Below, one piece after another: positions 19,887 to 21,691 of a stretch of 64,000 nt of DNA; the stretch's first letter is position 1; each line of letters starts with the position of its first letter. The notes beneath the pieces are model-generated. The model did no database searches and had not been told where the DNA came from. It saw only the letters and a program-made list of their open reading frames with translations. Position numbers and translations under genes: made by a program. The DNA is from Oikopleura dioica (lineage: Eukaryota; Animalia; Chordata), in contig OU015567.1 in NCBI GenBank assembly GCA_907165135.1, forward strand, positions 13,020,001-13,084,000. The letters are read 5' to 3'.

Positions 19887-20036
19887 ATGTGCTGAGTGTT
19901 AATTTCGTGCTGTTCGGAGGCCTTCAAGGCTATCGGCCGATGTTTTGGTTGTTACAAAGACGAGGAAGACAAGCCGCAAGCTTCTTGACAACGGCCCCCG
20001 CAGCAGCAACAGCGAACTCGAGGTGGATGAGGTTAA
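19887..20036 (+). CDS. Candidate 49-aa selenoprotein A with three in-frame UGA (codons 3, 34, 48)
   Basis: MCUVLISCCSEAFKAIGRCFGCYKDEEDKPQASUQRPPQQQQRTRGGUG*; TGA at 19893, 19986, 20028; acceptor at 19879; paralogous to the next ORF; SECIS-like element downstream. Confidence 0.75.
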
Positions 20037-20051
20037 GCCTCTTCGAGAGGC
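20037..20051 (+). promoter_or_regulatory. SRE-like stem-loop 6 nt after terminal UGA (gene A)
   Basis: TGA GGT TAA then GCCTC-TTCGA-GAGGC; same layout in genes B and PITH with compensatory changes. Confidence 0.7.
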
Positions 20052-20096
20052 GAACTAAATCCACCATGCTTTGAGTCAACTCACGACTCATCCTTC

Positions 20097-20163
20097 TGGA
20101 CGAGCCAATGAAGCTTCTTGTGAAACGATTCTGTCGACACATTTTGCAGAAACTCTTCGTCCA
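20097..20163 (+). promoter_or_regulatory. Type II SECIS-like element (gene A)
   Basis: Helix I TGGACGA/TCGTCCA; ATGA at 20108; helix II GCTTCTTGTG/CACATTTTGC (four central mismatches); AAA; mini-helix CGA/TCG; GA at 20149. Confidence 0.65.
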
Positions 20164-20319
20164 ATTCTCAAATCTACTATTTCGTAAAATAAACCATTCC
20201 CTCCCATTTGATCCAGCATTATTTAATATTCCTCCATAATTATTTTGATTTCTGAATAAATTTTTCGCATTCCAATTTCGAGTTCTTCCTTAATTTTGAC
20301 TTTTCAGACAACGAACACC

Positions 20320-20517
20320 ATGGTTTTGTGATTGATTGTTTCGGGCATCCGCTCCGCGAGTAATGCCATTTCTAAGGCCCTCAAGGGTGACGATAGCCAA
20401 AAGGTAGTCTTCTTTTAATTTTATTGGTTTGAGAATGTTTAGCCTATCGAATCCTCAGGTGGCTGACAGAAACCCCAAGCTGTCGAGAAATCGCAGCAGA
20501 AGTCCAAATGAGGCTAA
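20320..20517 (+). CDS. Candidate 52-aa selenoprotein B with three in-frame UGA (codons 4, 36, 51); two exons
   Basis: Exons 20320-20403 and 20443-20517 (39-bp GT-AG intron): MVLULIVSGIRSASNAISKALKGDDSQKPIESSGGUQKPQAVEKSQQKSKUG*; TGA at 20329, 20464, 20509; acceptor ttttcag at 20307. Confidence 0.75.
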
Positions 20518-20657: not shown

Positions 20658-20883
20658 TTGTCTTTATCCTCTTGACATCAGCAGGATAAACGATTTTTGT
20701 TGTATCACTGCTTTTCACACTTACTGTTGATATATTCAATATAAATCCTAATAAGCGATTTCTCGTGCACTGCCTGTTGTTAAAGTATATCGGTATATAT
20801 TGACTGTTCTCGTTTAATAAAAAAATCAATTTTTGATTGAAGAAAAAAGTTGAAGAATGAACTGATAGAAAACACAAACAGAG

Positions 20884-21535
20884 ATGAGTGGTTGTGTGAA
20901 ACTTGTCGAATTAGATCCCCTCGTGGACAAGGTAAAATTGTCCGAAAATTGCCGGGTGGGTATTCATGAATTTCTTATCAGGGGAAGTCTGAGTGCTTGA
21001 ACGAAGACGATGATCACACGTGGTTGAACGTGATCGAAGAATCCGCAACCGGAGAGCTCAAATCCGACTGCGATGAGCAGCTTATCCTCAGAGTAGAGTT
21101 TACTCAGCCCGTTAAGCTTCATTCTCTCGTCATTGAAGCTGGGTGTGACGCGGAGCAAGCCCCCAAAGTAAGAGAGCTTCTCGGAGGTGCGAATTTCTCA
21201 AACCAGGGTGCTTTTCTAGGAAATTCGACTCTTTGCGAATGAAACGAGTCCGATTTCTTTTGATGATGCTGAGCAGAGAAAGTCGACGCAGGACTTTGAC
21301 TTGTCCTTCGAAGAGCTGTCGAAGCCGATTGAAGTTCGATTTGTCAAATTCCAAAAAGTCAATAATATCACAATTTTCTTCAAGGTACATCTTTTCCGGG
21401 ATCTTTTTTTTTGAGTTCGCTCTTTAGAACAACCAAGGTGATCAAGATGTGACCTCCATGTCCAAAGTGCAATTTATCGGTTCGCCCATTGCCACAACGA
21501 ACATGAGCGAGCTCAAGAAGGTCGGATGAGGCTAA
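20884..21535 (+). CDS. PITH-domain-only protein (TXNL1 C-terminal-like) with predicted C-terminal Sec-Gly (...KKVG-U-G)
   Basis: Exons 20884-20931, 20982-21167, 21220-21384, 21428-21535; ECLNEDDDH, LKSDCDEQLILRVEFTQPVKLHSL, VRFVKFQKVNNITIFFKNNQGDQDVT, FIGSPIATTNMSELKKVG then TGA(21527) GGC TAA. PITH identity is firm; Sec read-through is inferred. Confidence 0.85.
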
Positions 21536-21550
21536 GCCCCTTCGAGGGGC
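21536..21550 (+). promoter_or_regulatory. SRE-like stem-loop 6 nt after terminal UGA (PITH gene)
   Basis: TGA GGC TAA then GCCCC-TTCGA-GGGGC. Confidence 0.7.
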
Positions 21551-21592
21551 GCCGCTGAACACAGCGATAAACAACATGTTTCTTCTCCAAAA

Positions 21593-21691
21593 GAGGATCT
21601 TCAGCGAACTTATGAAGCCACAAGTTCAAAGGGCCACATGCCACGACTTATGGTGGAGCGCATTTTTAATGTCATCGCTGCCTGGATTCTC
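21593..21691 (+). promoter_or_regulatory. Type II SECIS-like element (PITH gene)
   Basis: ATGA at 21612; helix II GCCACAAGTT/GACTTATGGT (9 of 10 paired, counting G-U); AAA; mini-helix GGC/GCC; GA at 21656; basal helices CAGCGA/TCGCTG and GAGGATC/GATTCTC. Confidence 0.75.

What the first reader, a model, noticed from the sequence alone, without database searches (positions are those of the whole stretch)
20884..21535. PITH-only protein with a predicted C-terminal selenocysteine
Seen: a stand-alone PITH domain with no thioredoxin domain, ending NMSELKKVG-TGA-GGC-TAA, with the best-formed SECIS of the three. Established: PITH domains (TXNL1, PITHD1) bind the 26S proteasome. From recall of recent cryo-EM work, the TXNL1 C-terminal tail inserts into the Rpn11 active site near its zinc. 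Inference: a Sec-Gly tail could ligate the Rpn11 Zn or replace the redox centre of the missing Trx domain, which would be a selenium-dependent proteasome regulator.
Basis: partly seen in the sequence, partly recalled or inferred. Interest (0 to 1): 0.85.

Follow-up and report, generated by a model that had tools for sequence, protein, structure and literature searches.

The report
Selenocysteine-tailed proteasome-binding PITH protein, Oikopleura
The tunicate Oikopleura dioica has turned its proteasome cofactor TXNL1 into a short PITH-only protein that almost certainly ends in Gly-selenocysteine-Gly. This is an animal member of a selenoprotein family so far listed only for algae, and the selenium atom sits where relatives carry a zinc-binding histidine.

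Summary
The window is O. dioica OKI2018_I69 chr2.

- **Gene:** a four-exon gene at 20884-21535 encodes a 168-codon PITH-only protein ending KKVG-UGA-GGC-UAA. After the UAA come a hairpin and then a SECIS-type stem-loop (AUGA / AAA / GA).
- **Conservation:** in every O. dioica lineage recovered, UGA is invariant. The next two codons change only synonymously (GGC/GGT, TAA/TAG). The hairpin is identical and the SECIS shows compensatory changes, while four-fold sites differ by 24-37% and the spacer is scrambled.
- **Transcript:** RNA reads confirm the three introns. Transcript contigs carry the spliced leader 15-28 nt before the ATG, so there is no thioredoxin exon.
- **Origin:** the protein nests inside Trx+PITH TXNL1s. 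Its closest relative ends ...FKRVAGEAGEAH with an ordinary stop.
- **Wider pattern:** copepod-like and protist PITH genes also end G-UGA-(Gly/His/Cys)-stop, and plant homologues often have His at that position.
- **Prior knowledge:** "PITH" is already listed as an algal selenoprotein family (Jiang 2020). No animal case, and no link to the Rpn11 zinc, was found in the literature searched.
- **Function:** a role at the Rpn11 zinc or as a redox centre is inferred, not shown.

The scan had already noted this three-gene cassette cluster on the same DNA.

The parts
20850..20883 (+). 5' UTR. The predicted spliced-leader acceptor is at 20849/20850 or 20855/20856, placed by homology.
   Evidence: In contigs L007 and L021-23 the SL joins at ...AACAG|TTCAAGAATGAACTG, and in L025 at ...AACAG|AATGAACTG. 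The window has the same AGAATGAACTG block. This was not observed directly in the Okinawa lineage.
20884..20931 (+). Exon 1: Met1 to Lys16. It begins about 8 residues before the PITH domain.
   Evidence: The joint 20930>20982 is seen in 89 RNA reads of run X42.
20982..21167 (+). Exon 2: PITH profile positions 19-83. It contains the E20 and D47 equivalents of TXNL1 E136 and D162.
   Evidence: Pfam E 2.8e-16; alignment to PDB TXNL1 chains.
21220..21384 (+). Exon 3: PITH profile positions 84-140. It contains the R118 equivalent of TXNL1 R234.
   Evidence: Pfam E 1.5e-13. The joint 21167>21220 (GT..AG) is seen in 146 reads.
21428..21526 (+). Exon 4 coding part: the end of the PITH domain and the tail ...TTNMSELKKVG. 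M159 and L162 are the equivalents of TXNL1 M275 and F278.
   Evidence: Pfam E 0.0066 on profile positions 141-173. The joint 21384>21428 is seen in 55 reads.
21527..21529 (+). UGA, read here as selenocysteine 167.
   Evidence: Invariant in the window, L007, L009/10, L019 (Bergen genome) and L020-25. No difference is listed there in run X42.
21530..21535 (+). GGC (Gly168) followed by the UAA stop.
   Evidence: All other lineages have GGT TAG, and runs X6 and X8 have GGT TAA. The only changes are synonymous or stop-to-stop.
21536..21550 (+). Hairpin GCCCCU-UCG-AGGGGC. It starts 6 nt after the UGA, directly after the true stop.
   Evidence: Fold -14.4 kcal/mol, z -1.6. It is 15/15 identical in all lineages although four-fold sites differ by 0.24-0.37. 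The mini-gene 1 copy carries a compensatory C>U / G>A pair.
21551..21601 (+). Spacer between the hairpin and the SECIS. It is not conserved.
   Evidence: Length is 52 nt here and 78-80 nt in other lineages. It cannot be aligned across most of its length.
21602..21687 (+). SECIS-type element, form 2. AUGA is at 21612-15. Helix II is 21617-26 paired with 21645-54. The AAA is at 21628-30. Helix III is 21632-34 paired with 21640-42. The GA is at 21656-57. Candidate helix I strands are 21602-07 with 21681-86, or 21604-06 with 21659-61.
   Evidence: Alignment A1 and pair counts: helices II and III are 83% paired, and 4 pairs carry double changes. Helix III follows the series G-C > G-U > A-U across lineages. 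The element is present in mature transcript contigs.

Best explanation
This is a real selenoprotein gene.

**What it is.** O. dioica's TXNL1 orthologue has lost its N-terminal thioredoxin domain and the last five residues of the TXNL1 tail, including the zinc-binding terminal His. It now ends ...NMSELKKV-Gly-Sec-Gly.

**How the UGA is decoded.**
- Shown: UGA 21527 is followed by one Gly codon and the true stop. A perfectly conserved hairpin starts 6 nt after the UGA, and a form-2 SECIS lies about 85 nt downstream in the same 3' UTR. The same three-part cassette serves the two neighbouring mini-genes of the same operon.
- Inferred: the hairpin and the SECIS together recode the UGA as Sec. If termination wins instead, the product is only two residues shorter.

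**What it does (inferred).** The PITH domain still docks on the 19S lid through the conserved Rpn2, Rpn10 and Rpn11 contacts. The short tail L-K-K-V-G-U-G lies in the Rpn11 catalytic groove. There the selenolate takes over the role of TXNL1's terminal His as a ligand of, or reactive group next to, the catalytic zinc. Occupancy of the proteasome by this cofactor would then depend on selenium supply. The Sec is more likely a tail function than a stand-in for the lost Trx domain.
For: **Gene model, domain and organism.**
-. The window is identical to GCA_907165135.1 OU015567.1.

**Splicing and expression.**
- 1026 raw oligo-dT RNA reads of a diverged lineage were laid, with 89, 146 and 55 reads across the three introns.
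- SL-capped transcript contigs exist.

**Coding signature beyond the UGA.**
- PITH shows GGC>GGT and TAA>TAG.
- Mini-gene 2 shows GGC, GGA and GGG.
- Four of four changes are synonymous or stop-to-stop. By my own rough count the chance probability is about 0.006, since 5 of the 18 possible single changes qualify.

**Selection on the RNA elements.**
- The hairpin is 15/15 identical, the SECIS core is conserved with compensatory pairs, and the spacer is scrambled.
- Four-fold site divergence is 0.24-0.37. Codon positions 1+2 show 10 differences out of 332, against 46 out of 166 at position 3.
- The invariant columns of A1 include the SECIS-defining AUGA, AA and GA.

**Sec machinery.**
- O. dioica has SPS2-Sec (PMC4561486).

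**Descent from TXNL1.**
- The protein is 64% identical to a 285-aa Trx+PITH protein.
- It sits in a clade with 100/99 support.
- The genomic relative L018 ends ...GEAH-TAG without a cassette.

**Proteasome contacts.**
- The residues contacting the proteasome are conserved.

**Same site elsewhere.**
- KKMG-U-H, KKGG-U-C and KQKG-U-C occur in protists, each with a post-stop hairpin and a SECIS.
- KKAG-U-G occurs in a copepod-like contig.
- Riccia and two unnamed plant-like homologues have His at that position.
Against: - There is no protein-level evidence (mass spectrometry or 75Se labelling) that Sec is inserted.
- Rfam's SECIS models give no hit even at E<=10. They also miss the textbook-like protist SECIS, so this negative result says little.
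- The predicted folding energy of the PITH SECIS is no better than that of shuffled sequence (z +0.15), and its helix I is ambiguous.
- The tail is five residues shorter than TXNL1's, so reaching the zinc needs a more direct path than in the human structures.
- Marchantia has Asn and another plant-like homologue has Glu at the Sec position, so a ligand there is not universal.
Run X7 gave no contigs.
Confidence: 0.65

Rival explanations
1. Sec is inserted, but it works as a redox centre rather than a zinc ligand. In this reading it is a flexible TrxR-like C-terminal selenol or selenenylsulfide that reduces or traps disulfides of substrates at the proteasome entrance. It would be recycled by thioredoxin reductase or glutathione, and so partly replace the lost Trx domain.
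For: - The tail Gly-Sec-Gly resembles the Gly-Cys-Sec-Gly end of thioredoxin reductase (established knowledge).
- Two protist homologues end in Sec-Cys, a dyad able to form a selenenylsulfide.
- TXNL1 is thought to reduce substrates at the entrance to the ATPase (PMC12700798).
- O. dioica lacks the Trx domain.
Against: - O. dioica has no Cys next to the Sec.
- A copepod-like protein keeps an intact WCGPC Trx domain together with the short tail (P0241). The tail is therefore not simply a Trx substitute.
- Plant homologues have His at that position, and His is not redox-active.
Confidence: 0.25
2. UGA 21527 is simply the stop codon and the protein ends ...KKVG, as in the public annotation. The downstream cassette would be conserved for another reason. 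It could serve 3'-end or operon processing, or it could be an element that serves the neighbouring multi-UGA mini-genes and was copied along.
For: - Public annotations stop at the TGA.
- Rfam finds no SECIS.
- The three genes lie in one operon, so shared RNA-processing signals are conceivable.
Against: - The two codons after the UGA evolve like codons: only synonymous and stop-to-stop changes, in two genes.
- The first stop never switches to TAA or TAG in any lineage, while the second stop does.
- The element has the AUGA / AA / GA invariants at SECIS spacing.
- Unrelated protist and copepod-like PITH genes show the same UGA-one codon-stop arrangement at the same residue.
- Long-tail TXNL1 genes end with ordinary stops and carry no such element.
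Confidence: 0.1

Closest known systems
TXNL1 (thioredoxin-like protein 1, TRP32), the Trx+PITH proteasome cofactor
   Same: - The PITH domain matches strongly by sequence (PDB TXNL1 chains, E 4.7e-36).
- It is nested within TXNL1s in the tree.
- The Rpn2/Rpn10/Rpn11 contact residues E136, D162, R234 and M275 are conserved.
   Different: - It has no thioredoxin domain.
- The tail is five residues shorter and lacks the terminal zinc-binding His289.
- It ends Gly-Sec-Gly, with a SECIS in the 3' UTR.
Algal 'PITH' selenoprotein family (Jiang et al. 2020, BMC Genomics 21:699, PMC7539508)
   Same: - It is a PITH-domain protein without a Trx-like domain that contains Sec.
- The protist genes I recovered have the Sec at the same tail position, followed by one residue, a stop, a hairpin and a SECIS.
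   Different: - This is an animal gene that arose from TXNL1 inside a TXNL1 clade of unnamed, probably tunicate, marine sequences. It does not group with the protist forms.
- The residue after the Sec is Gly, not His or Cys.
- The paper's text does not give the Sec position or any mechanism.
Thioredoxin reductase C-terminus (Gly-Cys-Sec-Gly-stop)
   Same: A penultimate Sec followed by Gly and the stop, decoded by a 3' UTR SECIS. A truncated product two residues shorter is possible when selenium is scarce (established knowledge).
   Different: - There is no adjacent Cys and no flavoprotein body.
- Whether the O. dioica cassette derives from the TXNRD 3' end was not tested.
PITHD1 and the plant At3g04780-type PITH-only proteins
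   Same: They are stand-alone PITH domains. The plant forms share the short tail ...NMSELKKVG-x-x, and At3g04780 is a PDB match (1xoy, E 1.9e-20).
   Different: - They have no Sec. His, Asn or Glu occupies that position.
- The O. dioica protein is only about 40% identical to them, against 64% to TXNL1 of its nearest relative.

Membership tests
PITH domain (PF06201) | A match to the Pfam PITH profile above the gathering score, across the whole domain | tested here: met
   Exons 2 and 3 score 60.1 and 51.2 bits against a cut-off of 23.7. Exon 4 scores 16.5 bits on the last profile segment. The three hits are contiguous, covering positions 19-173 of 176.
TXNL1 | PITH domain orthologous to that of TXNL1 | tested here: met
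   E 4.7e-36 to human TXNL1 chains. In the tree it sits in a clade of Trx+PITH proteins with 100/99 support.
TXNL1 | N-terminal thioredoxin domain with a CxxC active site | tested here: not met
   The spliced leader joins 15-28 nt upstream of the ATG in five transcript contigs. The protein starts about 8 residues before the PITH domain.
TXNL1 | C-terminal tail ending in the zinc-coordinating His (H289) | tested here: not met
   The tail is KKVG-U-G, against KRVAGKKGESH in 126 of 184 tails of standard length.
TXNL1 | Binding to the 26S proteasome (Rpn2, Rpn10, Rpn11) | not testable with these tools
   Only the conservation of E136, D162, R234 and M275 was checked.
Eukaryotic selenoprotein | In-frame UGA with a conserved coding frame downstream | tested here: met
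   UGA is invariant. GGC/GGT and TAA/TAG are the only changes across the lineages.
Eukaryotic selenoprotein | [quoted passage not shown] AA ... GA on a stem-loop) | tested here: met
   The invariant AUGA, AA and GA sit at canonical spacing, and helices II and III show covariation. The Rfam models do not score it, and they also miss the control SECIS elements.
Eukaryotic selenoprotein | Sec actually incorporated into the protein | not testable with these tools
   This needs mass spectrometry or 75Se labelling.
Eukaryotic selenoprotein | The organism has Sec-decoding machinery | not tested
   Taken from the literature only: O. dioica has SPS2-Sec (PMC4561486).
Algal PITH selenoprotein family | PITH-only protein with Sec; common descent with the algal members | tested here: inconclusive
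   The architecture and the Sec position match the protist genes. However, the tree places the O. dioica protein within animal TXNL1s and not with them.

The most novel reading that the evidence does not exclude
The tail L-K-K-V-G-Sec mimics the ubiquitin C-terminus L-R-L-R-G-G in the Rpn11 groove, and its selenolate directly ligates the catalytic zinc of this JAMM deubiquitinase. That would be a natural Sec-zinc bond, and it would make occupancy of the proteasome lid by this cofactor depend on selenium. The same solution would have arisen independently from TXNL1 in a tunicate and in copepod-like crustaceans, and would also exist in protists.
Probability: 0.2. Interest if true: 0.85.

Novelty: new member of a known kind. 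Interest (0 to 1): 0.6.

Why it matters
- **TXNL1 and the Rpn11 zinc.** Only in 2025 was TXNL1 shown to plug the Rpn11 active site with its terminal His, and its physiological role is still open. Nature has repeatedly replaced that tail by a shorter one carrying Sec, His or Sec-Cys at a fixed position. That points to this position as the functional contact, and it gives ready-made variants (U, C, H, stop) for testing what the tail does.
- **Selenoprotein families.** This would be the first animal PITH/TXNL1 selenoprotein in the literature I could search. The public annotation (166 aa) misses it.
- **How a selenoprotein can be born.** The gene shares a portable module, UGA-Gly-stop plus hairpin plus SECIS, with two neighbouring genes of the same operon.
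- **The post-stop hairpin.** A hairpin at +6 recurs in unrelated PITH-Sec genes. It may be a general aid for decoding a penultimate UGA.

Tried and rejected
- **Rfam.** The gathering-threshold and E<=10 scans of the window, of the region and of six related loci found no SECIS family hit. I set this negative aside because the same models also miss the protist SECIS elements, including the well-folded one in L036 (z -2.8).
- **Run X7.** This RNA run holds 0.53 of the sampled words, but no contigs could be laid.
- **Short ORF-fragment contigs.** L001, L002 and L005 did not reach the 3' end.
- **Descent from the algal or plant short-tail family, or horizontal transfer.** I considered this because the tail ELKKVG is identical to Marchantia's. 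I rejected it because overall identity is 40% against 64%, and because of the tree.
- **'Best-formed SECIS of the three'.** Folding energies do not support this.
- **A second, full-length TXNL1 in O. dioica.** The P0152 search covered candidates of 91-290 aa and returned only this gene's cluster from O. dioica. That is weak evidence of absence. PITHD1 was not searched.
- **Structure prediction.** I did not run it. A monomer model cannot place the tail on Rpn11, and the fold is already settled by sequence.
- **Full spliced protein as a query.** The full spliced protein read through the UGA has no reference. I therefore used exon references and the stored 166-aa protein P0152.

Full report
**1. 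What is there**

The window is identical to Oikopleura dioica OKI2018_I69 chromosome 2 (GCA_907165135.1, OU015567.1; the whole of L006 matches at window 17884).

The finding's coordinates span exactly one gene of four exons: 20884-20931, 20982-21167, 21220-21384 and 21428-21535, with GT..AG introns of 50, 52 and 43 nt. Each of exons 2 to 4 matches consecutive parts of Pfam PITH.

The reading frame ends AAG AAG GTC GGA TGA GGC TAA. The public annotation stops at the TGA and gives 166 aa (CAG5113573 for Okinawa, CBY22487 for Bergen).

**2. Transcript evidence**

Raw oligo-dT RNA-seq reads from a run with the same species label, but of a diverged lineage, were laid on the stretch. They cross all three introns, with 89, 146 and 55 reads.

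Metatranscriptome and Logan contigs of several lineages begin with the 40-nt spliced leader. It is joined 15-28 nt upstream of the ATG, and the leader is absent from the genomic copies. The mRNA therefore has no upstream thioredoxin exon, and 'PITH-only' is correct.

One contig carries the leader, mini-gene 2 and PITH together. Others carry PITH and the downstream MST/Hippo-type kinase. The genes therefore form an operon.

**3. The recoding cassette**

- Directly after the UAA lies a six-base-pair hairpin, GCCCCU-UCG-AGGGGC (21536-21550).
- About 85 nt after the UGA lies a stem-loop with AUGA (21612), an AAA bulge 12 nt later, a three-base-pair apical helix and a 3' GA (21656-57).
- The same arrangement follows the two upstream mini-genes, at 20028 and 20509.
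- In an alignment of eight such elements the invariant columns include AUGA, AA and GA. Helices II and III are 83% paired. Four pairs change on both sides, and no shuffle reaches the observed covariation score.
- Rfam's SECIS models do not score these elements. They also fail on three canonical-looking protist SECIS elements, so that negative is uninformative.

**4. Comparative test inside the O. dioica species complex**

I recovered the 3' end from the Bergen genome (L019), two metagenomic genomic contigs (L009, L010) and seven transcript contigs (L007, L020-L025).

- All have KKVG-TGA. The next codon is GGT rather than GGC, and the stop is TAG rather than TAA.
- Runs X6 and X8 show GGT TAA.
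- For mini-gene 2 the codon after the UGA is GGC, GGA or GGG in three lineages.
- So four of four changes in these six positions are synonymous or stop-to-stop. My rough estimate of the chance probability is 0.006.
- The hairpin is identical in every copy.
- The SECIS core is conserved, with a G-C > G-U > A-U series in helix III and G-U > A-U at the first pair of helix II.
- In contrast, the spacer differs in length (52 against 78-80 nt) and cannot be aligned. Four-fold degenerate sites differ by 24-37%.
- The protein itself is under purifying selection. Between the window and L025, codon positions 1+2 show 10 differences out of 332, against 46 out of 166 at position 3.

This is the pattern expected if the UGA is decoded and the two RNA elements are functional. 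O. dioica is known to have SPS2-Sec (PMC4561486).

**5. Origin**

The closest full-length relatives (56-64% identity) are 283-285-aa proteins with a WCGPC thioredoxin domain plus PITH. Their tails end ...FKRVAG-x-AGE-x-H or -E.

The genomic copy of the nearest one (L018) has small introns and a normal TAG after ...GEAH, with no cassette.

A maximum-likelihood tree places the O. dioica protein inside this clade (100/99), as sister to that relative (90/66). O. dioica therefore converted its TXNL1. It lost the Trx domain and the last five tail residues, and it acquired the Sec-Gly-stop cassette that it shares with its operon neighbours. The species behind L018 is unnamed; that it is another appendicularian is my inference.

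**6. The same tail elsewhere**

Scanning the C-termini of 332 retrieved PITH proteins showed two tail classes.

- The long class is ...[DE]FKRVAGKKGE-x-[HE], with 126 tails of the standard 17-residue length.
- The short class stops at ...[DE]LKK-x-G.

The DNA of four short-class genes reads as follows.

| Source | Reading | Downstream elements |
|---|---|---|
| Protist gene 1 | KKMG-TGA-CAC-TAA (Sec-His) | Strong hairpin starting right after the second stop (z -5.0), then an AUGA...AA...GA stem-loop |
| Protist gene 2 | KKGG-TGA-TGC-TAA (Sec-Cys) | Hairpin right after the second stop (z -3.3), then an AUGA...AA...GA stem-loop |
| Protist gene 3 | KQKG-TGA-TGT-TAG (Sec-Cys) | Hairpin a few nt after the second stop (z -2.1), then an AUGA...AA...GA stem-loop |
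| Copepod-like Tara contig (L037) | KKAG-TGA-GGC-TAG | Not seen: the contig ends 12 nt after the stop |

The relatives of the copepod-like sequence are arthropod TXNL1s (Eurytemora, 68%). One of them, P0241, is full-length with an intact Trx domain and the short tail, although its DNA was not seen.

Plant PITH-only homologues carry KKVG-H-S, KKVD-H-KE, KKVE-H-SH, KKVG-N-S or KKVN-E-NQG.

In the tree the short-tail forms of O. dioica, of the copepod-like group and of the protists each sit with their own relatives. The Sec tail was therefore gained, or kept, at least three times.

Long-tail genes used as controls end with ordinary stops.

**7. What is known**

'PITH' is one of the 42 algal selenoprotein families listed by Jiang et al. 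2020, described only as containing the proteasome-interacting thioredoxin domain (PMC7539508).

My searches found no paper on an animal PITH or TXNL1 selenoprotein, and none on a Sec-Rpn11 connection.

**8. Mechanism**

Two 2025 cryo-EM papers establish the following.

- TXNL1's PITH domain sits on Rpn11 through E136 and D162 (Rpn10/PSMD4) and R234 (Rpn2/PSMD1).
- M275 and F278 lie in the Rpn11 groove, and the terminal H289 coordinates the catalytic zinc.
- Zinc chelation weakens binding.
- A tail peptide inhibits isolated Rpn11 (PMC12700817 and PMC12700798).

In O. dioica, E20, D47, R118 and M159 are conserved at the corresponding positions, and F278 is Leu162. Proteasome docking is therefore likely, but this is inferred.

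The Sec lies five residues after Leu162, whereas H289 lies eleven after F278. It can only reach the zinc by a more direct path. The tail L-K-K-V-G-U has the same length and pattern as ubiquitin's L-R-L-R-G-G, whose last Gly sits at that zinc. This parallel is my inference and is untested.

Homologues carry His at the Sec position and His or Cys right after it. That fits a metal-ligand site, and the Sec-Cys forms also fit a redox dyad. Because a Trx-containing copepod-like protein has the same tail, the Sec is more likely a tail function than a substitute for the Trx domain.

If termination competes at the UGA, the product lacks only Sec-Gly. The ratio of the two forms would then follow selenium supply, as is known for thioredoxin reductase.

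**9. Verdict**

- The gene is a new, independently evolved animal member of a family already listed for algae.
- The proteasome and zinc mechanism is plausible, has comparative support, and is unproven.

Noticed in passing
window 19887-20517: Two upstream mini-genes each carry three in-frame UGA codons and the same UGA-GGY-UAA, hairpin and SECIS cassette. In other lineages the codon after the last UGA of mini-gene 2 is GGA (L008) or GGG (L009/L010), which is Gly in every case. The scan has already reported this cluster separately.
   Followed up: partly
L024:1-965; L007 and L025 whole: One transcript contig runs from the spliced leader through mini-gene 2 into the PITH gene. Others run from PITH into the downstream kinase. 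The mini-genes, PITH and the MST/Hippo-type kinase therefore look like one operon, with several SECIS elements on the precursor RNA.
   Followed up: partly
L037:559-612; proteins P0241, P0239, P0240, P0315, P0329: A copepod-like TXNL1 (68% identical to Eurytemora's) ends KKAG-TGA-GGC-TAG. A 279-aa relative has an intact WCGPC thioredoxin domain and the same short tail. This may be a second, independent animal TXNL1 selenoprotein. The contig ends 12 nt after the stop, so no SECIS was seen.
   Followed up: partly
L026:586-780, L031:599-790, L036:2152-2440: Three protist PITH-only genes end G-Sec-His or G-Sec-Cys. In each, a strong hairpin begins at or just after the second stop codon, that is 6-10 nt after the UGA, and a clear SECIS follows. 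Together with O. dioica, these are four lineages with the same hairpin spacing, which suggests a general helper for decoding a penultimate UGA.
   Followed up: partly
L026, L031, L036, L007, L021, L025: The Rfam release 15 SECIS models gave no hit at E<=10 on any of these SECIS-bearing transcripts. A blank from Rfam should therefore not count against a SECIS in such organisms.
   Followed up: yes
L019:678-839: The Bergen reference annotation calls a 53-aa gene between MetRS and PITH, where mini-gene 1 lies. The Okinawa annotation calls nothing there.
   Followed up: no
window 21527-21540: From recall only: thioredoxin reductase genes also end Sec-Gly-stop, and the bases around the stop may resemble this cassette. 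The O. dioica TXNRD 3' end could be the source of the module. I could not fetch that gene.
   Followed up: no
L018:2034-3220: The closest non-dioica relative is an unnamed marine metagenome contig. It keeps a complete Trx+PITH TXNL1 with mostly short introns (one about 170 nt) and an ordinary ...GEAH-TAG end. Within the 5.7 kb held, it is not flanked by MetRS or the kinase.
   Followed up: partly
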